From Bigelowiella natans CCMP2755 (lineage: Eukaryota > Protista > Cercozoa), in the NCBI GenBank assembly GCA_000320545.1, contig ADNK01002378.1, positions 12,123-76,122 on the forward strand: 64,000 nucleotides of DNA, given 5' to 3'. Numbering within the stretch: the stretch's first letter is position 1; the number at the start of each line of letters is the position of its first letter. Of this stretch, positions 1 to 64,000 are shown piece after piece. The notes below the pieces were generated by a model. It saw only the letters and a program-made list of their open reading frames with translations, did no database searches and was not told where the DNA came from. Made by a program: the position numbers and the translations under genes.

Positions 1-377
1 CATGTTACACATGATCGTGATATAGGCATCGAACGTTACTTTTTGATTAGCATTAGTCGATTTTAAATTTTAGAATAAATTATGTCAGGAATCGGAGCAC
101 ACCCAGCAGCCGCATTTTACAATTTATACGAGTCAACTTTGTAGTCGACCACCTATCTTGTGCGGCGCTATAATGAAGATTAACGAAGTTGGTAGCTCAA
201 AACGTCTTGACTATATACCTTGACTATATGGAGGCGAGGAGGAACTCTTCTATCATTGGAAATGGACTGTACGTGTTTGACGAATAATTAATAGCGGTTC
301 TAAAATCAATGCTCTCCAATCCATTTTATCGCCAGATTCTTATTTCTATTAAAAGTTTTTCTTCATGTGCGTTATCA

Positions 378-1839
378 TTATTTTCTGCCTCTACGGCCCC
401 TATTTAAGGCTTCTCTCTCCGACGCTTCGGCTGCCACTGATTGAAAAATAGTAGTAAGTTAACGAATCAGTATGAAGCCATCATTCATCTTCAGAGCGTT
501 TAAAGACTAGATGTGGCGTAAACTTACGTCTTGCTTTCTTCAGTTCCTTCTTTCGTCTACGCATTTCTTTCCGCTTCTCAATTATTCGCTTGTAGAGGCT
601 TTTTCGGTACTCTGATGAGAACACACAGTCAGAAGTTATAATTTATGTTGGATATTACGAAATTGGAATATTTATTTGTGTGTGTGTGTGTGTGTGCGTG
701 TGTGTGTGCATGTATAAGATTAAAAATATACATTGTTAAAGAGAAATAGATTGAGCCACTAACCGTCAATGGTAAATCTTTTATTGTCATCGAAAGATAT
801 CTTGATGGGGTTGGGTAATGTTGGTTCGTCTTTGGGGTTGTGAAACTGCTTTAAGTAGGGATGTTTCAAGGTCTCTTCCGCTGAAAGGCGTCTCTTAGGA
901 TTGAATTGCAACAACCCTTCCAACAGATCGATAGCTTCTTCGGGCGCATCAGGGTACATGTCTTCTAGTAAGACCTTTTTTTTTATTTCTATCGAGCTGA
1001 GCATGCTCTTCGCAAACTTGGATTTGATGGACTTCACCTCTTCCTCCGAAGGGAAGCCAGTGAGCTGAACTATTCTCTCTAATTGGTTGATTGTAGACTC
1101 CCCGGGGAACATAGGTTTTCCTCCAAGAAGCTCCCCCATAATGCATCCAACGGACCACATGTCGACGGCCTTGGTATACTTTGGGGATCCGAGGAGAATC
1201 TCAGGCGCCCTGTACCATCGAGTGGCCACGTAGTCGGTTAACGCATCCTGCTCACTGGTCTCCGCAACAGATCGCGCGAGACCAAAGTCGATAAGTTTAA
1301 CGTGGCAGTCTGAGTTGAGGAGTACATTAGAGGGCTTCATGTCCCGGTGTATCAGCTCCCCAGAATGTAGGTACTTCAGCGCCTTTACAGATTGGTACAG
1401 CACGAAACGTTTGTGGATATCGACCAAGATTCCTGCTCGAATAACTGCGTGAAGGTTTATTTCCATGTGCTCAAAGACAAGGTAAATATCACGATTGTTG
1501 TCCGCTTTCAGTACGTTAAGCAACTTGATAATATTTTCGTGCGGAACCATATTGAGTTCCTGAAGAAACATAATTTCACGGAAGGTCCTCTGTGCGTCCG
1601 TTGAGTTCTGGAAAGCGTCGAAAATCTTCTTCAAAGCAACTGTTCTCTGCAGAAATGTACAAGGAATCATCTCGTCTAAGGAAAAGAAATAGCACATGAT
1701 TTAAGATATAGTCTAAAATATTAGCTTCAACCCTTGTCTTCTTGTCTCGAGACTTCCAAACAATGCCATAAGCACCTTTCCCGACCCTTTCACCGCGATC
1801 ATACTTTCTCAACACATGCGCATCGACTTCGTCGCTCAT
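378..1839 (-). CDS. MAPK15: MAP kinase, ERK7/8 (MAPK15) subfamily; 4 exons
   Basis: Spliced GT-AG model: MSDEVDAHVLRKY..GKGAYGIVWK / VALKKIFDAFQNSTDAQRTFREI, HRDMKPSN, DFGLAR, TDY activation motif (LTDYVATRWYRAPE). C-terminal exons EYRKSLYKRIIEKRK.. and ..RRGRK*. Confidence 0.95.
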
Positions 1840-3048
1840 CCTTGCCAACCTGATCCGTAGTGTATCAAACCATGTTAAAAAATTGTTATCAACAACATCA
1901 ATTCTGATCACGATTGTGTTCATAATCGAAGACAGCTTGGATGCTACAGTGGAAGCCATGCTAGTGATTATTTTCCAACTTGTTCTCAAAATCATAAATG
2001 CGATTACCCTTTCGTTGCAGAAGGTAAGCAACAGGTAGTCAGTCAGCTCGTGGGAATGGGGGTCAAGTCGAATGAGGGCAGAAATTTAGGAGCTGGTGTT
2101 CAGTCTTCAGGAAAATGTAAAGGCGAATTATGAGATGCGGTACGAAAATTGGGATGACGCATCTAAATTTACCAAAAGATGTTAAGTCATCGTAGCAGAC
2201 CAAGAAACAATTTCTTAATTTGGATTCTGCACGAGTCCCTTTTTCAGCACGAGAGTTACATTTTAATTCGATGTTTGATTGAATAATTTAAAATAAGTAA
2301 CGATGAATGCTTTGTCTCAATGTAGTAACGGAATGTATTACATACAAATAGCGACAGCAATGGTAGAATACCATGTACCAATGTGCTTTGTGGGTTGCCG
2401 TTTCCATTCGGTTCTTCGATCCGAAATTCATTAAATTACACCTTCGCGACATCATCACTTCATAAAATATTTTTCATAATTTTACTTAAATTTCTGGAGG
2501 CTTGACTATTTTTGGAGAATTCGAAAATCTTGCGTGTTTGAGGCTGGCGACATAGTATTCATGTTTGCTCTAAACGAGTTACCGGAGAGGCCTTATCTTT
2601 CTCGGTGACGACCGCGTTTTTCTTTTTTGCGGTGTATTCTGGCAAGATCCACAGAGTAAGACAAAAATATTGATATATTGTAAAATATTTGCTTAGATCA
2701 TATTTACGTCATCCCGAAAGGATCATTTTATTTTAAAAAGGCCTTTGTTAGGGGAGTGAAATTTGGAGCTGGATCTGAAAATTGCTTGCACCACTCATAC
2801 CCAAGTGAGGTACGATAATGGCCCCCCCCCTCGGTTGCGTTTTGCGTCTGTGTTTCCAAATCTAGCAATAAATTGGTGATATGCATATCGAAATATTCTG
2901 TTTGTTGGGGCGGGTAAATGGGCAACGGTACCTCTGTTTTACCATTTGTCAATCGTGCGATTACGCAGTGCACCTCGCTTCACATGTTCGTAGTTCGACG
3001 TTTATTGGGTATGAATTCACGAAGTGAATCAAACAATATTTCAGGCGA

Positions 3049-4051
3049 GATGATGGGCCGTAGCTCTTCATTTGCAATGAAGTCGTCCCTGCTCCTGAAT
3101 GCCCTCCTCGCACTTATCGCTCTCGGAGCGTTAGTTTCATTTCGCACTTCGACAACTGGAGGGGAGAATTTGGAGGCAGTTATGTCGACAATTTCTAGAA
3201 ATGGTATACTACTCTTTTGAAGAGCACAGTTGTCACTGGCTAATAGATTTTTTGGTTTAGTCGCAGTCAATGGAAGGAGGAACCAGATTGCATCTGGACG
3301 CCGCTGTGGACTCACTGGCAAGAGCGGAACTACAGCTTACAAATATTGCTTCTCCCACAAGTGTGTATACTCACGACTTCGAAACACGAATTCGAAACCT
3401 ACTTTTCATGCACATATTAATGGAATTTGCCTTTTTTATTACTAGGCGTGCAACCAAGCGTCAGCACCCAAACATTCAGCAGAAGTATGTATTCTGGCCA
3501 GAGGGGCAGAGGATGGTGAAAATTAAGCTAAGTACATCAGCTCTCAAGAGTATAGATAAGAAGGGGTTGCAAGTGATGGCTAAAGAAGCAGGAATCGACT
3601 TGAACAAGCTCCCATTTAAGGACATGAGACCTGAGAGACAAGAATACAAAGAAAAGCATAAGATGGAAGTTCCGGTTTCTAAGAAATGGGTATCTGGTTA
3701 TTACAAGAAGCAACACAGAATGAAGAATGCAGAGAAGCTAGCTGCTTCGAAGAAAACTCCTCTTGAAGGAAAATACTACCACGGAAGAGTTCTATTCGGA
3801 CGCTTTAATGAAGACCAGATGAGACAGATCAACGGTATTAATATATCCCTAAATTCAAATCGTATTTATTTGATAGAAACATATTCAATATGAGTTGTGG
3901 ACTCAAAAAGATCATTGGAAGACATATAAATCTGATTTAAGTTGCTTGAAATTGCGTCTTGTTTTCAGATGTTCCGCTTGAAGATACCGCTGAGAAAGTC
4001 TATGAAGAAGGTCTTGAAGTAGAGGATACATCCGCACCGGCATCGGCATAA
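3049..4051 (+). CDS. rpl28: Plastid-targeted 50S ribosomal protein L28 with bipartite leader and C-terminal extension; 4 exons
   Basis: Signal peptide (LLLNALLALIALGALVSF) and transit-like segment, then GRRCGLTGKSGTTAYKYCFSHK/RATKRQHPNIQQKYVFWPEGQRMVKIKLSTSALKSIDKKGL (bL28 signature). Three GT-AG introns keep the frame; TAA at 4049-4051. Confidence 0.93.
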
Positions 4052-4299
4052 ACTAAATTATTATGTATAACCATGAGAGCACAAGGCTTCTATCTGTATA
4101 AAGCTTGGGTGCGCATTTAACAGTGCTGCAGATGCTGCGGGAACAGCAGTAGCCTAACAGCGACGATTTTGACGGGTTGTTAATTGGATGTGTACGTATG
4201 TACCTTGCTGTGCTGTAATGACGTTGAATTATTATGAAGTTAGTGGTCTTCGAAAATACTTCAAATTCACCCAGCGGCAGTGATCATGAAAGAATCCAT

Positions 4300-5200
4300 C
4301 GTTATGTGTTTCACGTGAACAATATCCATTGCATGTCACCAGCGTAGCGGACCAGTGTGATGACATTGTTAGCAGCGTGATGAGGCATCGCACAGCTAGA
4401 CTGGCGTATTTTTGTGTAGATCGTCGCCAGAGCTAGCAGACAGTCTAGCAGCGGGCATGGCACACGCAATGAAGCAGCATCACTAGATCAATGCAGAACA
4501 AGCATGGCTCATGCTAGCATGGCTGATGGCCGAGATGCATGCATGAAGCGTGCTAGCGTGGCTTGCACAAATTATAATTCGATCTAGCTAGACAACGCAA
4601 TGCGCACCAGCTAGCCAGCTAGCCTAGCAGCGCACATCTCTAGATCTGCGTGCACACATGCGATGCCACATGCGCATTGTTGATGCATTCAATGCACATG
4701 CAACAGCATTGCACAGCTGTTCACAGATGGACACTAGCAGCAGCACGCGCATGGTGGCATGTGTCACATGCTAGCATGGCTGCCATGCTAGCACAGCTGA
4801 ACCTAGAGACGTTGCAGTTGTTCACTAGTTCAGTTCACAACATGGGCACGCGTTCACACATTCTGGCATCGCATTGCTAGATTCTAGGATTGGCTGATCG
4901 ACAGCATTGTTCTGTTTTGCGCATCTACATCTTGACGTCTAGATGTGGACCTAGCTAGCTAGGGACCTAGGGACGTGCAACAAATCGTCGCAAATTGAAG
5001 ATGACAAAACCAATTCTTGATCAATTTCTCACTACATCAACGTGACGAGCAAGTCTAGATGGAAGCTAGTGCAAGCCTTCATTTCGTGACAATCATGCAA
5101 TTGTAGCGTGCATGCACACCTAGATGCACCATGCACACATTCACAACATGTGTGCACATGAGTGCATGCAATGTGTGCAGCAGCACATGCGTAACACAAG
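4300..5200. other. Palindrome-rich (CATG/TGCA/CTAG) intergenic island 1, convergent junction
   Basis: Dense GCTAGC, GCATGC, TGCA; CATGCTAGCATG at 4510-4521 and 4767-4778; no credible coding frame. Confidence 0.7.
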
Positions 5201-5222
5201 AATGCCGCGTCTTAAGGTTGTG

Positions 5223-6799
5223 CTATTCGAACTTCCATGTCACATGAGATCTGTTTATGGTCTCTCCTTCATCGGGATACCACAAACTACATGAACAAAA
5301 GAAGGTGTGTTAGTGCTACCGACCAACTTGAACTTTGCATGATGTTCCTACCTCATGAACGATGATTGGAGGTCAATTTGCTCTCCCTCTACCTTCTCTT
5401 TCGGATCACTTTCTTTTGTGCTTCCTCTAAGAATTCTCATGATGGTTTGTACTCGGATTCCCTAAACATCATCATTCTTAAAAATGTGACAGAATTTCGA
5501 ATGAAATTATTTGAAGTTTCTTAGAACTTTGATTCTGTGATTCTCAGATATTGTCATTAAGGCAGCCAAAATCTTCACTTCACCAGAACCCTCATTCATG
5601 ATCGTTGCATTCCAGCCTCGAAGTTCTTGTTCCTTTGACACAAAAGCCTGGAGAATAGTCCCACTGATGTTTCTTTTCTGACATTGCTCGGGAGAAGAAA
5701 CAGTCATCCAAGCATCATTTGTCGATTTGTCCTGATAAAAACTCACAGGCTCTGCAAATGCCGAAAGCCTCGATAGCAAGTGACGGAGAGCCAGCATCCC
5801 TTCCATGTTTTTTTGCATACTCTTGCAGTGTTCATTTACATTTTTTCCATGCAATATCACACCATCGCGAGCTTGCTCAAATTTGCACATGTGCTTGAAA
5901 ACTCTTCGTTGAATTCCCTCTATGCACACATCGATGTGATCTCGGCTTAGCTTGGGCATTTTTTCAGACAATGATTGAATCCTATCCATCGTTCTCAAGA
6001 TGCAAGAGCTTGTCTCACACATTTTTTCCTGTTGAAAATTAGAATTCAAACATCCATTAAGTAAGTCGTAGCCGGTGGATGGATACATGTCTACCTGTAA
6101 TTTGGCGACTATTTCAATTTCTTTAGGTATGGACAGTGAATGCTCACTGTGTAAGCGAAGTCTTGCCTTCACATCTAGTGTGTCAGAGTAATTAAGCCTC
6201 ATTGTTAAGCGAAAGTTCAAATCGAATAGATATGCATCAGTGCATCAGAGTGCCACTTTTTAACTTGGTCCTCATCAAATTAGCTGAATATGTCTTTCTC
6301 AAACGACAGAATGACAATGAACAATGAATGCATGTGTGAAAATTCACATGAAATTTTAAGCATTGCACGACCTTCATCCAATTTTATTGCCTTAGAGCCA
6401 TCATCCCACATTGTGCTTTTCAATGAATCTTCGAAAAACAAAGTAATTAGTAACATGCCCTGCACCGCTAAGCTTCATCTATACCCATCTCCAACTTAAA
6501 CGATTGATCAATTGATTGGTTCATCATGTTCTCAAAGAGTGTAGAAGTTACTGTCATTGTCGCTTAAATATGATGATAGAACGCTGAACAACTGCGTCAA
6601 CAAAAATTGAGAGAAAGGAACAACAAAACGCGGTGAGCATACTACTGACAATTTGCAGGCCAATTAGTCGTTCAGAACTCATCCTCTGTCCCACCTCCCA
6701 AACACAGTCATGGGCAATTGTGGGTATGCGATCAATGATGTACTCGATTACTTCTATATGATGCTCCCCGAATCGCCAAGATTCGCCAAAGTTTTTCAT
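5223..6799 (-). CDS. Hypothetical multi-exon protein, no recognisable domain
   Basis: 237-aa ORF 5507-6220 plus flanking minus-strand ORFs. 3' exons splice in frame (GIRVQTIMRILRG..FMS/LWYPDEGETINRSHVTWKFE*). 5' end uncertain. Confidence 0.55.
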
Positions 6800-7273
6800 T
6801 CAATGTCTTCGCTTAGTGTTACCCTTATCCACTGGGACACGCATGTCATGTGTACTTTTTAGCGCGACTTTGAGCACTGGACTTGTTTGTAAGGTCTCAA
6901 CTGTGTGGGACACCCACCCGGCCTCAACCAAAAAACGAGGAGCGTCATATCATTCGTGGGACAAACCGTTATCTACGACGTAGATTTTCTGCAACTGAAA
7001 ATGAATTTCCCTCCGGGTAAAATGTGAGGCGTTTGTACAAAAGATCTCGCTTTAATTGAATGTTTGCAGCCTACACGTCCGAGATGTAGATCTTTCCAAA
7101 CATAAGAGATCTTTTACATACCTTATCGATAAAGAAGAAAAGAAAAGAAATTTGGAAGGAGAAGACTCTCGGTCAACGAAGCCAAATACCTTATTCTAAT
7201 CCTATTCTAATCGAGATAATCACCACAGGTTTCCTGCAATTTCGCAGATTCGACATTTAAATATTCCATCTTC

Positions 7274-57136: not shown

Positions 57137-59280
57137 ATGAACGGACGAATCACAGGTACTCATACCACACATCGGCAAATTTCCAAGAGAAGACGTTAGC
57201 ATGAATCGGGATATCCCTAAGAAATATTAGTTTTCTCCCAAATTGTGTTGTCGCTATTGCATAATATCACCAGTTATCATGTAAAACTAGGCAAAAACCG
57301 GAAAGGCAAGTTTTAGCAACACAAATCCGTTTATGCTATGCAGGATACCCTCGCAGAATGGACGTCCAATGGCCTCCATTTACGACAATTTGCGATTTTC
57401 CTTCTTTTTTCTTTTAAATAGCCTAATATTATTTGATATAATTTAGAGAAATCATGTCGCGATCAAAAACTGCAAGGTAGTCTCCATTTTGTCGATCAGG
57501 ACATTCAGCTATAAAACACTGAGGTTGCCTTCAATGCCTTCGGAGGAAAAATGTTTGCTGTGTTGAGCCTCTTGGCTCTTGCGGTCCTGCATGTTCTGAA
57601 TGGCGCGTGTGTATTCATAGACATATGTGCAGGACTACCTTACGATGAGCAGACTGCCTCAAAAATTGCAAACATATATTTAGATGTGGCTTTAGTAAAG
57701 ATGTCGGCATTTAACTGTTGCATGTAGACACTTCTTTTTTAAGTCCTTTGCCGAACACACCATTTGTTCTCGAGCACCGCCTACAATTTCTATCTACATT
57801 TGTATCTTTCATAGCGAACTATATCCTTATAACTCGTAAACATTTGCTAATCCAGGACTCTTCCTCCCCAGTGACGTGACCGTTTGAGCCACTTACCCAC
57901 CCACCCACCCACCCACAACGTGAAGCTTCCATACGGGTGGACCACAGGAATTAAACAAAACCTCGGCGCTGACTCGATCGATGGGGAAAGCGCGCACGAT
58001 ATCCAGATAATAGTCGGTGGAGGGGTTTCGCAAGCACAATGCAAGGCCAGAATTGCGGCCTCGAGCTGGTGCGATGGATATTCCCTTATTTTCTGGTAGC
58101 TGCAGCCGCCCTCCGGTGCAACCTGCTGTCTGTGGGGTATACCGTCCTCTGGCTTCTTTACTTCGCCCTCCAACCGATACAAAACAATGCGACGTAAGAA
58201 TTGTAGTTGTAGTTGTAGTTGTAGTTGCAGTTTTGGTAGTCATCTGAAATTAGAGTTCCTAAGATCCCCCCCTCTTATAATTTGCGCACTCTCGTTGACT
58301 TTGAGCGCTCCACTCGTGCCTTTTTATTCGCAAGTCTCACTCCACCATTCGTGTATGTGTACGATCCATATCACCAGAGGCACTTATTTCTCGCCATCGT
58401 ATTGGATCTCCGCTGCAGCCTACACTTCTCTTGCCTGCATTATCCGAGCATCGATTCTCCTGTTCGTATCGCTGCCACCCCCCTCTTCCGAAGTTCCTGG
58501 GGTTTCAGTTCTACGTTGGATTCTGCAGTTGTTAGGAGTTGCGTCCCAGCTAACTGACACAGATGCTGGCAACGGCTCTGGCGACATTGGGGGATATATA
58601 GTAGGCGGGGGGGGGAAAGGAGAAATCTTTGATATACTGCACGCCGTTTCTGAGGTAATACTTGACACTCTCGCTCTCCCTCTCCCTTGAATGTGCGTGG
58701 TGGTGTGCGAATATCTGACATTTCCATGCTCCATCGTATGCAGGTGTGCGTGTGTGTGATATCCGTAGCGATGCTTTGTCGTCTCCTCTGTGAGCAGAAT
58801 CGGTCAGTTATTCGCACATCTCACATTTTCACAAGAACAAATAGTAGGGATAGAGGGCGAAAATGTATGGCTTCCACGCCTTTCCCCTCCGCAATCTAGT
58901 AGGGTTACGGCACTTTCAGGAATGTAGTCTAAGAATAGTCGCGTTTTACGTAATGGAGAGGGTGTTATCGATAGCAGATAATTTCCATAACGTCAAGTAT
59001 GAAGAGAAATTCTGTCAGAATTGGTAGAGTTTCTCATTTCGCTAGCCTCTTCGTCCCTCCTCCTCTCTTACCTTAGAATGGCCCCGTGGCAGCTGAAAGC
59101 ATATCCAGACTTCCATCAAAGGACGATTTTTAGCTCTCTGATAGTCGCAGCGATAGCATGGCCGAGCTTAGGCAGCTTTCCTTACATCATCCTCGCCATG
59201 CTGAACCTCGTCAATTGGAGCATCACTGTAAATATTGTGACACATTAACACAAACATAAACACAAACACACACATACTTA

Positions 59281-59323
<43 letters not shown>

Positions 59324-59497
59324 CAAGTCTACCTAGACACAGCAAATCTCTCATTATTATTTGGCTTGTATCTACTACTTGTGCCACACACACACATACA
59401 AACACACACACACACATCCCTACACAATCAGGAGAGTAATCTGTGGGCATGCTGCAATGGTCTTCCCGTAGCGGTAGTAGCAGTAGTATTATATGTG

Positions 59498-59528
<31 letters not shown>

Positions 59529-60393
59529 AGGGAGGGAGGGAGGGAGAGAGAGAGAGAGAGAGGTGGCGGGGTGGGGGACACAACTGCCCGCATAACAGCT
59601 TTCTTATGTCGTTTGCCGAGGGAGGGGATACTTGTTTTAAATTGCGACCTTATAGACAAGGAAGTTTGATGAATGTGCGAATCTGAAGACGTTGCTTCTT
59701 CGTTGGCTTCGAGTGCCCGTGCACACAACACACGCACGTGCACCGGGAACACACAAACACACAAATCAGTACACATGTGCGCCGTGCGTACAAAGCTCAC
59801 ATGTGTATGGTAATGTATCCTTCCAATTTGAATCTATATCAAGGTTTTGGCCTGGTATTCTGGGATAAGACTTTTCATCCTGCTGCTACTCTCCCTCCCC
59901 ACAACACAAGACGAGGCCCTTTTCCCACGCATTTTGCTGAAAACTTTAGGTGGTGAAACAGACGCAGCTAGCTGCCACTACAAGCTTAACCGAAACGACG
60001 TCATTGCGATTCAAATTGCTTATCTTTAACAACGATCTTTTGATGTTGGTGTCGTTTTCCCATCGTCGCCTTCGTCGTCATCATCATCATCATCATTATC
60101 ACCACCACTATCTTCGTAATCACCACCGAATTCTCATGTTTTCCTTCACGCCGTCTTGCCGTTGGGATCTTCTTCCCCGTTGTTGCATTTCTAGGGCTGC
60201 GCATATACATCACCAGCCCCCGGCTGATCACAGAGGGAATCGCTATTTTAGCCGAGATGGTGGCATACGGGGTAGTAGCTCGCCTGCGTTTGTTTGCCCG
60301 TTTACTTGCTTTGAGGCACTGAACAGGGCGAGGCGACGCGGTGGATCGAGAGAGCACGAATTAGCGCAAAGACTGAACGACTCGTAAAACTGT

Positions 60394-60425
<32 letters not shown>

Positions 60426-61541
60426 TCTGTTAGGCTGCCTGCTTTCACTACCATGAGATCGCGTTCGCGGAGCCAGGGGAAAGGCTGGGGGAAACTGAGC
60501 TCATCCTCCCCGCCTCAGAAAGGTGCTGTGGAGAAGCAGAAATGCGCGCCGTGCGTACGATGTATGGCCATGACACTGCGCCCCTCCTCGCCCCCACTCG
60601 TAATTAACGCCGAAAGGTGAAGCCGACTTGATTGGTTGATTGTGTGCGCGTGCGTGTTCTTGCAGGAAGTTGAACCGGCAATCTTCTCTCGTCACAAAGT
60701 AGGTTTATAGATGTTTCATATAGCAGTGGTACAGATGGTGATGGTGAAAATGGTGATGGTGATGGTGGTACATGCACTGGTATTGAGAGGTTTGTTGCGG
60801 GTTTTATCTCAATTTTCGCTTGTCCTTATTTTGCGCTATTACCCCCCATCCCCCATCCCCCATTCCAAGAACGAGCCAGGGTTTCGAGTCGCTACTGTTT
60901 TCGCTCCGGCCACATGCGTACAAGTGCTGCCTGCTCTCCCTCTTCATTACGTCGATTCAGGTAATAAGTAGGTCTCACGGCAGGGAGGCCAATCAGCATT
61001 TCTCTGCCCATTTCTGCTATCTAGTGAAGATATTATCGATCATACGTCTGATCATTCCCCCCCCAACCCTTTTCCTTCCCCCCCCCACCAATTGTCGCTA
61101 GATTCCGTGCCTCCTCTCCGTACCACTCCTCTGCATGCTGTTCATCGCAATCATGCTGGAGAAAGGCCAGTTTCCTTACCTCTGGACATCGGTGGCATTT
61201 TACCCCCCTCTACTGGCGTTGACGCAGTACGCGTTTGCACTGCCTAACGTGCTGCCGAACACGCACACCCTTTACATAGTAGGCCTTTGGCGCCCGGTAA
61301 GAAAGCAGTGCCTTATTAGTCGGAATTGTTGTTGTTGCTGTTGCCTGCCGTGATGCTTGCGAGTCTCTTATTCTTCAATGTTGCATGATTCTTCTCAGCC
61401 CGTGCCACTCACAACCACCTCATCAGCTTACTAGTTTTCCCATCTCGCCCCCCTCTAACCCCCTTTCCTTAACAATAGACATATCCATGCCTCTATCTGG
61501 CAGTTGCTTTCCTTCCTTCTCTCGGTAAGAGAAGATTTGAA

Positions 61542-61586
<45 letters not shown>

Positions 61587-62054
61587 GGGCGAGGAGAGGA
61601 GGAGGCGGCGGATGATGATGATACATGACGATGGTGTGGCATCTGGCAGCTTTTGGGTTCTACGGCTACATTCTGCGGGGGACTTCTGGTCGCGGATTAC
61701 ACGCATTCACGAAGGAGGGCGCATTTGAAGCTGTGAAGTCGGGAAACATAGAGGTCTTGTGCAGCATCTATAGTTGCTTTCCGTCGCTTGGCGCCGCTGC
61801 TACTAGACAATGAGCAAGTTAATAATAGTGGGAAGCAGTATTCTAAGTGAGCTATGGAGAGGCGAGTTAATAGTGGTTATTGGATGCTGTCATAACATGC
61901 CTTGTCTTACGGATGATTGTTGTCCCCAATGCAGTTAATACTGAAGCTCACGGAAGCAAACTCCTGGGTAGAAAAGCGATGAAGATGACGAAGAAGCTGT
62001 TTACATTCATACCTACCCGCTGTCGCACTCAAATGCAAACCTTTCAATTTCTCC

Positions 62055-62087
<33 letters not shown>

Positions 62088-63019
62088 CCTCCCTCCCTCC
62101 TTCCCTGTGGCCTTTCCTCTTTCATTTTAAAGAGGGGTGAAGACTAACGTCAATGTCATCATCCTGGTCTTTTTTGCTGTAATGGCTAGATACTGGGCGA
62201 AGTTACCGAAGTCGGAAACTCGCTGCTGCACGTACGAGAAGACAAAACGAATTATGCTTTCATAATACATGCAATAGGAAGGAAGGGAGGGAGGGGGAGA
62301 GAAACATCAGAACTAACATTTTAGATAAAAGTAATATGTGTGGAAAAATATTTCATCTACATAGAACTAGAGTGGAAAGCTATTTTTTAAAATTTTGACC
62401 GTGACGGTGACAGTAGCCACTTCGCGACGATTATCATCAGTCATCATGAAATTATCACCATCATCATCATCGTCGTCATCATTATCATCATCGTAATCAG
62501 GTGGCGTGCGGTTATAACCAGCGGAAGATCGTGCGAATACTTCTAGAATACATTCGGGTAGTAAGGAAGGAATGCACGAGAGAAGCATCGATATCAACTG
62601 GCGACTCACGTTTGATGATGATAATAATGACGATTGTTGTTGTTGTTTGTCGTCTTCTTCTCCTTCTTCTTCTTCGTCTTCTTCTTCTTCTTCGTCTATT
62701 CCTTGCCCCCCCCCCCTTTCCCAGAGCTCTCCCGACCCTGCACTCTCAATCAACCTGAAAAATCTCTTCGGCGATACCCCGCTGCACGTTGCGGTTCGGA
62801 ACGGATGCGTGAAGGTCAAACCGTTTTCCAGCATTTCTTTACCACCGCGCCCCCCCCCTTCATATTTGTTCACTTCCCATGCTGCACTGCTGTAGGTTGA
62901 GGAAATTCTAAAGAGGCAGCGTGGAATTGACCTGAACATCAGAAACGAGAAAGTAATACCCCACCCCCCCCCTCCCTTGACGGTGTTCTCGTTCCTCAAA
63001 CGACATTCTTCTGGATGGC

Positions 63020-63057
<38 letters not shown>

Positions 63058-63216
63058 CCATACAGCAGCACATACCCGTGTTGGCTTCTACCTATTCGAT
63101 GAGCTGAATGAAATCAATCTCGTCAAATCAGGGCAAAACAGCTGCATCTCTTTCCGACGGATATGCCGTGCGAGTGCGCCGAGGATTTCGGAATTTCAAC
63201 GACTTTGTAGTCTGGG

Positions 63217-63250
<34 letters not shown>

Positions 63251-63309
63251 TTCTTCCTTCGTGAAATAGACACGCGCTCTACAGCGTAGCACACAGCGAA
63301 CGTCTCCTT

Positions 63310-63347
<38 letters not shown>

Positions 63348-63601
63348 TCTCTCTCTCTCCCTCCCCCCCTCTCACCCTGTATTTCTCTGCCCTCGTGCGC
63401 GCACATTTGCGGTGCTGTTACTGCTGCTGCTGCTGCTGCTATTTTGTTGTTGTTGTTTGTTGTTGTGACTCGTCGTCCGTTTCTCTCTTGTTCTTCAGGT
63501 GTTTCTATCAAATGCCGAGATGCTGACCCTCGTATTCGTATACGCTGTCGGTATGTTCGTGATTGCAGCATCGGCGTGTATTATTACACACACATTGCAT
63601 T

Positions 63602-63673
<72 letters not shown>

Positions 63674-64000
63674 CTCGCGACGAGACATCATCCTAATGCA
63701 TGATCGATTCCTGCAGGAATGGGAGCGGTGAACATCCTCCATTCGCTGTACCTGGTGCTCTTCCTTATCTTCTTCTCGGCGCCACGGCTCTCCAAGACTA
63801 TGTGGCTTGTAGTGGTACATACACGACGACAACAACGGAAGCAGCAGCAGCAGCTCATATCTTCTTCGCAGTTCAAATATGTTTTTCCCCAAAGATGGGG
63901 GGCGGGGAGAGGAGGAGGAGTAGGGGGAGGGGGTGAGTAGCAGCAACCACAACACAAGTATCCTTTGCTTTGCTTTGGCTTCAATATGCTTCCCCACCCC
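57137..64000 (+). CDS. Piezo-like mechanosensitive channel (N-terminal blade repeats) with inserted ankyrin repeats; runs off the window
   Basis: TM exons LIVAAIAWPSLGSFPYIILAMLNLVNW, IPCLLSVPLLCMLFIAIM..FYPPLLALTQYAFALP and GMGAVNILHSLYLVLFLIFFSAPRLSKTMWLVVV match Piezo THU patterns in the expected order. Ankyrin exons GNSLLH/VACGYNQRKIVRILLE and INLKNLFGDTPLHVAVRNGCVK/VEEILK..IDLNIRNEK/GKTA. Start approximate; pore region not in the window. Confidence 0.72.
63602..63673 (+). repeat. (TCATCG)n intronic microsatellite
   Basis: About 12 hexamer units. One of dozens of (AT)n, (CT)n, (GT)n and triplet tracts in introns, e.g. 9713-9752, 25641-25722, 44884-44947. Confidence 0.9.

What the first reader, a model, noticed from the sequence alone, without database searches (positions are those of the whole stretch)
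61620..63215. Piezo-like channel with an ankyrin-repeat module inserted in its blade
Seen in sequence: a + strand chain of multi-TM exons is interrupted by exons spelling about 3-4 ankyrin repeats (AFEAVKSGNIE..; GNSLLH/VACGYNQRKIVRILLE; INLKNLFGDTPLHVAVRNGCVK/VEEILKRQRGIDLNIRNEK/GKTAA). TM exons resume immediately afterwards. Established: the flanking segments follow Piezo THU patterns (AWPSLGSFPY vs human PIEZO1 AHPSALSSVY; KTMWLVVV vs KAFWWLVVAY), and characterised Piezos have no ankyrin domain. Ankyrin tethers are instead typical of TRPN/NOMPC and TRPA. Inference: a hybrid mechanosensor whose blade loop (about THU3-THU4) carries a cytoplasmic protein-binding module that could couple the membrane-curvature channel to the cytoskeleton.
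Basis: partly seen in the sequence, partly recalled or inferred. Interest (0 to 1): 0.82.

Follow-up and report, generated by a model that had tools for sequence, protein, structure and literature searches.

The report
Piezo channel gene with built-in ankyrin repeats
The alga Bigelowiella natans has a Piezo-type mechanosensitive channel gene with three to four ankyrin repeats spliced in frame into an inner loop of its outer blade; relatives in other Cercozoa share this layout, which I found in no paper and whose function nobody has tested.

Summary
On the + strand, 19 GT-AG exons (58039-63814) join in one phase with no stop in 602 codons. Seven of them (61650-63215) spell about 3.5 ankyrin repeats. 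Exon J carries the end of a membrane helix and the start of the first repeat. Exon O carries the last repeat and the lead-in to the next membrane unit. A nested gene is therefore excluded.

The contig ends at 64000. The public JGI model of Bigelowiella natans (P0001) continues onto contig C1358, where the Piezo THU9-anchor (187 bits) and cap are encoded.

A 2611-aa relative (P0002) is one uninterrupted ORF, and 16 of the 19 exons align to it in order. About 680 aa of the blade are missing from the assembly.

Seven long Piezos carry clear ankyrin repeats at the same site, and three more carry degraded ones. They include Paulinella and a Cercozoa MAG, and all fall in one supported clade.

The module follows helix 12 on the cytoplasmic side. 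A further four-helix unit that vertebrate Piezos lack comes after it.

Its function is inferred: most likely a docking site, not a NOMPC-like spring.

An earlier first-reader note in this scan (s1-716251) has almost the same title for another piece of this genome. I found no second such locus.

The parts
58039..58193 (+). Exon A: start codon, helices TM1-TM2 (THU1)
   Evidence: ATG at 58039, GT donor. Aligns to the N-terminus of P0002 extended by the open codons upstream on its contig (21/44 identical, z 15.9).
58378..58654 (+). Exon B: TM3 and a loop (THU1)
   Evidence: AG/GT borders, in phase with A. Aligns to P0002 21-42 (z 3.1).
58744..58802 (+). Exon C: TM4 (THU1)
   Evidence: AG/GT borders and needed for the phase. 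Hydrophobic. Not supported by homology on its own.
59077..59227 (+). Exon D: TM5-TM6 (THU2), holds 'AWPSLGSFPY'
   Evidence: tblastn to P0002 102-145, E 5e-4; z 12.7.
59844..59949 (+). Exon D': TM7 (THU2)
   Evidence: AG/GT borders; supplies the one carried base that exon E needs. Aligns to P0002 159-177 (z 4.1).
60195..60271 (+). Exon E: TM8 (THU2)
   Evidence: Aligns to P0002 194-217 (11/24 identical, z 5.6); tblastn.
60670..60698 (+). Exon F: short cytoplasmic linker
   Evidence: Among the 32 stop-free AG..GT segments between E and G with the length class (3n+2) that G requires, this is the one that matches P0002, at 246-254 next to exon G's match (5/9 identical, 2 of 200 shuffles as high). 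A further phase-neutral exon between E and F cannot be excluded.
60870..60960 (+). Exon G: helix before TM9, and TM9 (THU3)
   Evidence: Aligns to P0002 256-285 (15/30 identical, z 13.8). Also in the JGI model P0001.
61102..61296 (+). Exon H: TM10-TM11 (THU3)
   Evidence: Aligns to P0002 286-350 (31/65 identical, z 22.7). G and H together give tblastn E 2.4e-13.
61479..61524 (+). Exon I: first half of TM12
   Evidence: Aligns to P0002 353-365 (9/13 identical). In P0001.
61650..61753 (+). Exon J: end of TM12 plus the start of ankyrin repeat 1, in one exon
   Evidence: Aligns to P0002 367-378 at its helix end (z 6.6). Its second half reads as the first ankyrin helix. In P0001.
61935..61967 (+).
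   Evidence: AG/GT borders, 33 nt, phase-neutral. It brings repeat 1 to the same length as in P0002 and fits the ankyrin consensus. Not significant on its own, so provisional.
62190..62231 (+). Exon K: hairpin and start of ankyrin repeat 2
   Evidence: Aligns to P0002 410-423 (7/14 identical, z 4.0).
62501..62560 (+). Exon L: helices of ankyrin repeat 2 (the donor may be at 62557 or 62560; both keep the frame)
   Evidence: Pfam Ank_3, 13.8 bits, below threshold. Aligns to P0002 424-440, directly after exon K's match. In P0001.
62725..62814 (+). Exon M: linker and ankyrin repeat 3 with the 'GDTPLH' motif
   Evidence: Pfam Ank 21.5 bits against a cut-off of 21.1. Aligns to P0002 445-468 (15/24 identical, z 17.2).
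62896..62952 (+). Exon N: second helix and hairpin of ankyrin repeat 3
   Evidence: Aligns to P0002 472-489 (z 4.0). In P0001.
63132..63215 (+). Exon O: partial fourth repeat running into the helix that precedes the next membrane unit
   Evidence: In P0001 (96.7% over 30 aa). AG/GT borders and in phase. Not significant against P0002 on its own.
63499..63550 (+). Exon P: first helix of the four-helix unit after the ankyrin module
   Evidence: Aligns to P0002 519-535 (14/17 identical, z 13.4).
63717..63814 (+). Exon Q: second helix and start of the third; the last exon before the contig ends at 64000
   Evidence: Aligns to P0002 537-568 (24/32 identical, z 24.3); tblastn E 8.8e-11. The contig end is shown.

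Best explanation
Window 58039-63814 (+) holds the first 602 codons of a Piezo-family channel gene of Bigelowiella natans (JGI protein 141396). The gene runs off contig C1359, crosses an assembly gap that hides about 680 residues of blade, and continues on contig C1358. There the beam region, the last membrane units, the anchor, the cap and the C-terminal domain are encoded.

Shown: a module of about 110 residues with three full ankyrin repeats and a partial fourth is spliced in frame directly after the twelfth membrane helix (the end of THU3). A further four-helix unit follows it directly.

Follows from the established Piezo topology (N-terminus inside, four helices per unit): the module lies on the cytoplasmic face of the pore-distal blade. 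The layout is inherited, not an accident of this gene. It occurs at the same site in a clade of Piezos that includes Paulinella micropora and a Cercozoa MAG.

Inferred, not shown: the module is a fixed cytoplasmic docking surface. Through it a partner protein, either a cortical or cytoskeletal protein or a regulator, is held at the distal blade, or neighbouring blades are braced. This would tune or localise the channel rather than gate it. Gating itself most likely works as in other Piezos, through the conserved proximal blade, beam, anchor and pore.
For: Gene structure: 19 exons, 18 canonical GT-AG introns, one phase, 0 stops in 602 codons, against 36 and 10 stops in the other two frames. Exons J and O each code for both a membrane helix and an ankyrin part.

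Homolog check: 16 of the 19 exons align one by one, in order and end to end, with the intron-free homolog P0002. P0002 is a single ORF on an 8040-nt contig.

Ankyrin: exon M passes Pfam's Ank cut-off. P0001 scores Ank_2 29.1, Ank 28.3 and Ank_3 30.6 bits, all above their cut-offs. In the AlphaFold model of P0002 245-650, the module has block-mean pLDDT 81-91 (model residues 141-250). It matches ankyrin domains at Z 15-18, rmsd 1.7-2.9 A over about 116 residues, and 4ANK (1n0r) at TM-score 0.80.

Piezo: six-frame hits on C1358 for THU9-anchor (91.6 bits) and cap. P0001 maps to window 60434-63817 and then to C1358 141-7268. It scores THU9_anchor 187, THU_Piezo1 81 and cap 55 bits. P0002 matches solved Piezo chains at E 1e-54 to 1e-44.

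Contig order: the C1588-to-C1587 pair shows that contig numbers descend along scaffolds.

Conservation: ankyrin repeats sit at the same site in P0001, P0002, P0008, P0012, P0024, P0029 (Paulinella) and P0071 (Cercozoa MAG), with degraded ones in P0033, P0043 and P0203. P0001 was too short for the tree. Among the rows in it, all members with clear or degraded repeats fall in one clade with SH-aLRT 96. P0008, P0012, P0024 and P0033 are uninterrupted ORFs on their contigs.
Against: No transcript of B. natans itself was examined. The public model is ab initio (Augustus) and faulty at both ends.

About 680 residues between the two contigs are absent from the assembly. Continuity therefore rests on scaffold order, the JGI model and colinearity with P0002.

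The window's exons taken alone reach no Piezo Pfam model.

Exons C, J' and O are not supported by homology on their own.

Nothing tested here bears on function. The conserved residues of the module are the structural consensus ones, which gives no hint of a binding surface. C. elegans PEZO-1 isoform K shows that the distal blade can be dispensable for mechanical activation (PMC12951647), so the module may have little effect on gating.
Confidence: 0.8

Rival explanations
1. The ankyrin module is a tether or gating spring, as in NOMPC. It links the blade to the cytoskeleton so that filament tension opens the channel.
For: The module is cytoplasmic and joined by short linkers to TM12 and to the helix before the next unit, so force could pass through it. 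NOMPC's ankyrin region is among the sequence and fold matches.
Against: It has only 3-4 repeats (about 110 residues), against 29 in NOMPC. It sits inside the chain, not at a free end. The ankyrin matches are generic: designed DARPins score just as well. No partner is known. The module lies in the pore-distal blade, which is dispensable for activation in PEZO-1 isoform K (PMC12951647).
Confidence: 0.15
2. The module has no outside partner. It is an internal brace that fixes the angle between THU3 and the next unit, or that contacts a neighbouring blade, and so sets blade curvature.
For: The linkers on both sides are short, and the last ankyrin helix runs into the helix that precedes the next unit in the model. 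Inter-blade latches occur in PEZO-1 (PMC12951647). In P0043 and P0203 the ankyrin consensus is degraded while the insert is kept. That fits a spacer role.
Against: Ankyrin repeats are typically binding surfaces for other proteins (established knowledge). The packing of the membrane units in the model is of low confidence (mean pLDDT 67, pTM 0.46), so no contact can be read from it.
Confidence: 0.25
3. The architecture is an artefact: the ankyrin exons belong to a nested or neighbouring gene, or the membrane exons are not Piezo.
For: The window's exons alone hit no Piezo Pfam model. The JGI model is ab initio.
Against: Exons J and O each code for both helix and repeat. The phase is kept through 18 introns. 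Exon-by-exon alignment to a single-ORF homolog is colinear. Four homologs carry both domain types in one uninterrupted ORF. The minus-strand ORFs have no Pfam match above threshold (one chance-level Atrophin-1 hit at 11.9 bits) and there is no Rfam match.
Confidence: 0.02
4. The B. natans copy is a decaying or unexpressed paralog, and only its relatives are functional.
For: The middle of the gene is unassembled. The genome holds at least three other Piezo loci.
Against: There is no stop or frame break in 602 codons here, and none in the C1358 exons that match P0002 up to its residue 2557. The PF..E......W motif is intact on C1358.
Confidence: 0.05

Closest known systems
Vertebrate PIEZO1 / PIEZO2 (solved structures such as 5Z10, 6B3R, 6KG7)
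   Same: The same family. THU9-anchor, cap and C-terminal domain match at high scores. The N-terminal four-helix units align in order with snake Piezo1. The beam region follows the last pre-beam unit.
   Different: Vertebrate Piezos have no ankyrin repeats (Pfam lists). Where they have a linker of about 55 residues between THU3 and THU4 (P0206 538-593), this protein has the ankyrin module plus one extra four-helix unit.
Drosophila NOMPC (TRPN) and TRPA1
   Same: They are cation channels that carry cytoplasmic ankyrin repeats. NOMPC is mechanically gated, and its repeats are among the sequence and fold matches.
   Different: Unrelated channel fold (six-helix TRP tetramer). The ankyrin array is long and N-terminal (29 repeats in NOMPC), not a 3-4 repeat insert inside a blade. 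This is a resemblance in parts, not in kinship.
C. elegans PEZO-1 isoforms (PMC12951647)
   Same: A non-mammalian Piezo in which the distal blade (THU1-THU4) varies and makes contacts of its own. It shows that this region is where Piezos diversify.
   Different: No accessory folded domain. The variation there comes from splicing and from inter-blade latching.
Other protist Piezos with added domains
   Same: Public Piezo proteins with extra Pfam domains exist, for example Bremia lactucae P0209 with FN3 and PH. So Piezos of protists accrete cytoplasmic modules.
   Different: Different domains at different sites. Of these, only for the ankyrin insert was conservation across a clade tested and shown here.

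Membership tests
Piezo mechanosensitive channel family | C-terminal pore module: last four-helix unit, anchor, outer helix, cap, inner helix and C-terminal domain | tested here: met
   Found on the continuing contig C1358: PF24874 at 91.6 bits and PF12166 at 36 and 35 bits in six frames. In the public model P0001, PF24874 scores 187 bits and PF12166 55 bits. Exons matching P0002 run up to its residue 2557.
Piezo mechanosensitive channel family | Conserved P-F-x2-E-x6-W motif in the anchor region (Prole and Taylor 2013, PMC3681921) | tested here: met
   'IPFAFEMQSLLDW' reads directly from C1358, frame 2 ORF 5451-5807.
Piezo mechanosensitive channel family | N-terminal blade built of repeated four-helix units (THUs) | tested here: met
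   Hydropathy and motif reading give 12 helices in three units before the ankyrin module. The window's exons are colinear with P0002, which hits PF24871 at 43.8 bits. Caveat: the window's exons alone hit no Piezo model.
Piezo mechanosensitive channel family | One continuous polypeptide from blade to pore | tested here: inconclusive
   The JGI model spans C1359 to C1358. The contig order is supported by a second contig pair. But about 680 residues (P0002 570-1250) have no match anywhere in the assembly.
Piezo mechanosensitive channel family | Trimeric, mechanically gated cation channel | not testable with these tools
   Needs expression and electrophysiology or cryo-EM.
Ankyrin repeat (Pfam clan Ank) | Profile match above the curated threshold | tested here: met
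   Exon M alone: PF00023 at 21.5 bits against 21.1. P0001 residues 142-226: Ank_2 29.1 against 27.3, Ank 28.3 against 21.1, Ank_3 30.6 against 22.3.
Ankyrin repeat (Pfam clan Ank) | Stacked helix-turn-helix repeats with hairpins | tested here: met
   Tested on the homolog P0002, not on the window's own joined sequence. The AlphaFold module has block-mean pLDDT 81-91, Z 15-18 to ankyrin domains and TM-score 0.80 to 1n0r.
TRPN/NOMPC-type ankyrin tether | Long N-terminal ankyrin array (about 29 repeats) that acts as a spring to microtubules | tested here: not met
   There are 3-4 repeats, inside the chain, between membrane units. Microtubule binding cannot be tested here.

The most novel reading that the evidence does not exclude
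The ankyrin module anchors the distal blade of a Piezo to the cell cortex or to a cytoskeletal partner. This cercozoan clade would then be a natural Piezo that combines force-from-lipid with force-from-filament sensing. It would be a ready-made system for testing whether tethering a blade changes Piezo gating.
Probability: 0.15. Interest if true: 0.8.

Novelty: new variant of a known kind. Interest (0 to 1): 0.5.

Why it matters
How much Piezo channels depend on the membrane alone, and how much on tethers to the cytoskeleton, is still debated. A natural Piezo lineage with a folded protein-binding module fixed to the cytoplasmic side of its outer blade offers a direct test. The test is to compare currents, localisation and partners with and without the module.

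The finding also shows that the distal blade linkers of protist Piezos accept whole domains. In addition, these proteins seem to have ten rather than nine four-helix units, which matters for modelling blade curvature.

For genome annotation, the public B. natans model of this gene is wrong at both ends and lacks two ankyrin exons.

Tried and rejected
Pfam on single exons gave no Piezo hit. A six-frame search of the genome with PF24871 gave no hit on the window's contig. PF15917 gave nothing anywhere, controls included, so that result is uninformative.

tblastx of the window against the paralog loci gave only low-complexity matches.

The word search with P0002 residues 1-900 was swamped by ordinary ankyrin proteins and told nothing about Piezos. 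The search with residues 1700-2560 found only 18 proteins.

An E-INS-i alignment of 26 full-length Piezos timed out. I used a faster MAFFT mode instead.

Alignments A1 and A2 (one fragment against full-length proteins) stretched the fragment's ends and were discarded. A3, made of five fragments taken from uninterrupted ORFs, was used for folding.

My first exon chain through 60195-60960 had two stops. It was repaired by adding exon D' and by moving exon F's acceptor from 60666 to 60670.

Three other places in the genome that matched the ankyrin part of P0002 (contigs C872, C2835, C175) are plain ankyrin genes with no Piezo parts. No ankyrin unit was found in the paralog regions I fetched.

The minus-strand ORFs over the region have no Pfam match above threshold (one chance-level hit, Atrophin-1 at 11.9 bits, E 0.06), and there is no Rfam match.

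The structure search said nothing useful about the membrane units, because the ankyrin domain filled the hit list.

No complex prediction was run, because there is no candidate partner.

Full report
What is in the window. The region is eukaryotic, with short exons between introns rich in simple repeats. On the + strand I built a chain of 19 exons from 58039 to 63814. Every internal border is AG/GT. The exons fit in one phase and give 602 codons without a stop, while the other two frames of the same concatenation hold 36 and 10 stops. I joined the exons inside a script only to count stops and phase. All searches used single exons by reference, the public model P0001, or natural homologs.

The ankyrin part. 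Exons J (61650-61753), J' (61935-61967), K, L, M, N and O (up to 63215) spell three full ankyrin repeats and a partial fourth. Exon M alone passes Pfam's Ank threshold (21.5 bits against 21.1), and exon L gives a weak Ank_3 hit. A home-made ankyrin-unit profile run over all six frames of the 64-kb window hits only these two exons. It is phase-neutral, fits the consensus of the second helix of a repeat, and gives repeat 1 the same length as in the homolog P0002. It is too short to be significant alone.

One transcript or two. Exon J codes for the end of a membrane helix and then for the first ankyrin helix. Exon O codes for the last repeat and then for the amphipathic lead-in to the next membrane unit. 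A nested gene cannot explain that. The minus-strand ORFs over the region have no Pfam match above threshold (one chance-level hit), and there is no Rfam match.

Is it a Piezo. The window's exons alone reach no Piezo model, and the contig ends at window position 64000. The genome holds Piezo pore modules on contigs C1850, C3532, C1358 and C1587/C1588. In the C1588/C1587 pair the anchor lies at the start of C1587 and the cap near the end of C1588, both on the minus strand. Contig numbers therefore run downwards along scaffolds, and C1358 should follow C1359. C1358 does start with + strand exons for the region around the beam. These are followed by the last membrane units, the anchor with its 'IPFAFEMQSLLDW' motif, the cap and the C-terminal helix.

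A search of 1.8 billion representative proteins with one C1358 exon returned a 100% identical public protein, P0001. This is JGI model 141396 (aug1.62_g16104) of Bigelowiella natans. By tblastn its residues 6-307 lie on window 60434-63817, including the ankyrin exons, and its residues 320-1752 lie on C1358 141-7268. Its Pfam content is Ank_2, Ank and Ank_3 at residues 142-226, then THU_Piezo1, Piezo_THU9_anchor (187 bits) and Piezo_cap.

An intron-free witness. The next hit, P0002 (2611 aa, 65% identical in the query exon), is one ORF on an 8040-nt JGI contig. It carries Ank_2 (48 bits), Piezo_TM1-24 (44 bits), THU_Piezo1, THU9_anchor and cap. It matches solved Piezo chains at E 1e-54 to 1e-44, and its residues 390-500 match ankyrin proteins. 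Sixteen of my 19 exons, taken one at a time, align to P0002 in strict order, and neighbouring exons abut on neighbouring residues. For example, G ends at 285 and H starts at 286; K ends at 423 and L starts at 424. Summing the per-exon identity counts gives 211 of 404, about 52% (my arithmetic). This confirms the splice model without relying on gene prediction.

P0002 residues 570-1250 have no match anywhere in the assembly. So about 680 residues of the B. natans blade lie in the gap between the two contigs. The JGI model simply jumps over it. That model also starts with a non-homologous exon, lacks exons A-F, J' and K, and stops about 200 residues early.

Distribution. Among the long Piezos recovered, clear ankyrin repeats lie at the same site in seven proteins:
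- P0001 (B. natans)
- P0002, P0008, P0012 and P0024, which are unnamed
- P0029 (Paulinella micropora)
- P0071 (Cercozoa sp. M6MM MAG)

P0033, P0043 and P0203 have degraded but recognisable repeats there. In a tree of the C-terminal 720 residues of 42 Piezos, these rows (P0001 was too short for the tree) and two N-terminally truncated sequences form one clade with SH-aLRT 96. Vertebrate, oomycete, diplonemid and red-algal Piezos lie elsewhere. All three named members are Cercozoa. P0008, P0012, P0024 and P0033 are uninterrupted ORFs on their contigs, two of them on genomic contigs of 29 and 73 kb. In those organisms ankyrin and Piezo parts are therefore one coding unit beyond doubt. JGI's pipeline already labels P0024 'Piezo ... 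/ Ankyrin repeats (3 copies)'.

Where in the blade. Reading helices and the recurring unit motifs in the window and in P0002 gives three four-helix units before the module. These are A-C, then D, D' and E, then G-J. With the known Piezo topology the module is then cytoplasmic.

In snake Piezo1 (P0206) the Pfam model PF24871 maps almost one to one onto residues 26-712. P0002 670-822 hits positions 520-674 of that model. P0002 729-822 aligns to the matching stretch of human Piezo1. A MAFFT alignment of 26 full-length Piezos puts P0002 380-705 opposite P0206 538-593.

So the ankyrin module, together with one further four-helix unit (P0002 517-636, which exons P and Q begin), occupies what is only a short THU3-THU4 linker in vertebrates. 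That extra unit is also present in the ankyrin-less P0070, and partly so in the diplonemid P0039. It is therefore older than the ankyrin insert. Ten units would give 42 helices, the number Prole and Taylor predicted for several protozoan Piezos (PMC3681921). This point rests on alignments of repeated units and should be checked by a structure.

Structure. I folded P0002 245-650, taken by reference from its contig, with an alignment of five such fragments. The model is middling overall (mean pLDDT 67, pTM 0.46) but good in the module (block means 81-91). It shows four long helices, then the ankyrin helix pairs, then four long helices. About six residues separate helix 12 from the first ankyrin helix, and the last ankyrin helix runs almost directly into the helix before the next unit. 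The module matches ankyrin domains at Z 15-18 (rmsd 1.7-2.9 A over about 116 residues) and the designed 4ANK protein at TM-score 0.80. The packing of the membrane units is not reliable.

How it probably works. Shown: the architecture, its conservation and the fold. Following from established Piezo topology: the cytoplasmic side. Inferred: the role.

Three to four repeats inside the chain, held by short linkers, make a rigid knob on the inner face of the distal blade. The commonest job of such a domain is to bind another protein, so I favour a docking site that localises or tunes the channel. An internal brace between units or blades is a serious rival.

A NOMPC-like spring is unlikely, given the length and position of the module. 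In addition, the distal blade is dispensable for activation in C. elegans PEZO-1 isoform K (PMC12951647). Nothing here tests any of these roles.

Novelty. Five full-text searches found no paper that describes a Piezo with ankyrin repeats, or Piezos of Cercozoa. A blank search is not proof of absence. The proteins themselves are in public databases with machine annotation. Other protist Piezos carry other added domains, such as Bremia with FN3 and PH and the C2-like insert reported by this scan for another B. natans Piezo (s1-739025).

I therefore rate this a new variant of a known kind, of moderate interest. An earlier first-reader note (s1-716251) bears nearly the same title for another piece of this genome. 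I could not tell whether it is this gene seen from a different piece, and I found no second ankyrin-bearing Piezo locus among the loci I read.

Limits. I examined no B. natans transcript data. The middle of the gene is unassembled. Exons C, J' and O and the exact donor of exon L (62557 or 62560) are provisional.

Noticed in passing
window 63499-63814 (exons P, Q); P0002 residues 517-636: The four-helix unit after the ankyrin module has no counterpart in vertebrate Piezo1/2, where only a linker of about 55 residues lies (P0206 538-593). It is present in the ankyrin-less protist Piezo P0070, and partly so in P0039. These Piezos would then have ten units (42 helices) instead of nine, matching the 42 helices predicted for protozoan Piezos in PMC3681921.
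   Followed up: partly
window 60434-63817 and L030 (C1358) 141-7268: The public JGI model aug1.62_g16104 (P0001, 1752 aa) is faulty. It starts with a non-homologous exon at 60434 and lacks exons A-F, J' and K. It jumps the contig gap and ends at C1358 7268, although exons matching P0002 continue to 9597.
   Followed up: partly
end of window (64000 = end of contig C1359) and start of C1358: An assembly gap hides about 680 residues of this gene (P0002 570-1250 has no match in the whole assembly). Contig numbers run downwards along scaffolds, as the C1588/C1587 Piezo pair shows.
   Followed up: yes
G000 contigs C1850 (59.5-62.1 kb), C3532 (about 1.9-8.6 kb), C1587/C1588, with weak hits on C1406 and C3434: B. 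natans has at least four Piezo loci. The C3532 copy has very long exons (open frames of 515, 714 and 545 aa), unlike the intron-rich gene of this window.
   Followed up: partly
P0209 (Bremia lactucae) and P0033 residues 1474-1531: Other protist Piezos show further added domains: FN3 and PH in the Bremia protein (precomputed Pfam), and sub-threshold PAS hits after the beam in P0033.
   Followed up: no
L030 (C1358) 1183-1344; P0002 1446-1489: A conserved segment of unknown fold lies after the beam region of this same gene (48% identical between B. natans and P0002). I did not test whether it relates to the C2-like insert that the scan reported for a B. natans Piezo (s1-739025).
   Followed up: no
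window 59240-59560, 61540-61590, 62030-62090, 63020-63060, 63220-63350, 63600-63670: The introns of this gene are packed with microsatellites: (TA)n, (GT)n, (GA)n, (GAT)n and (CGT)n runs. These give long spurious ORFs on both strands.
   Followed up: no
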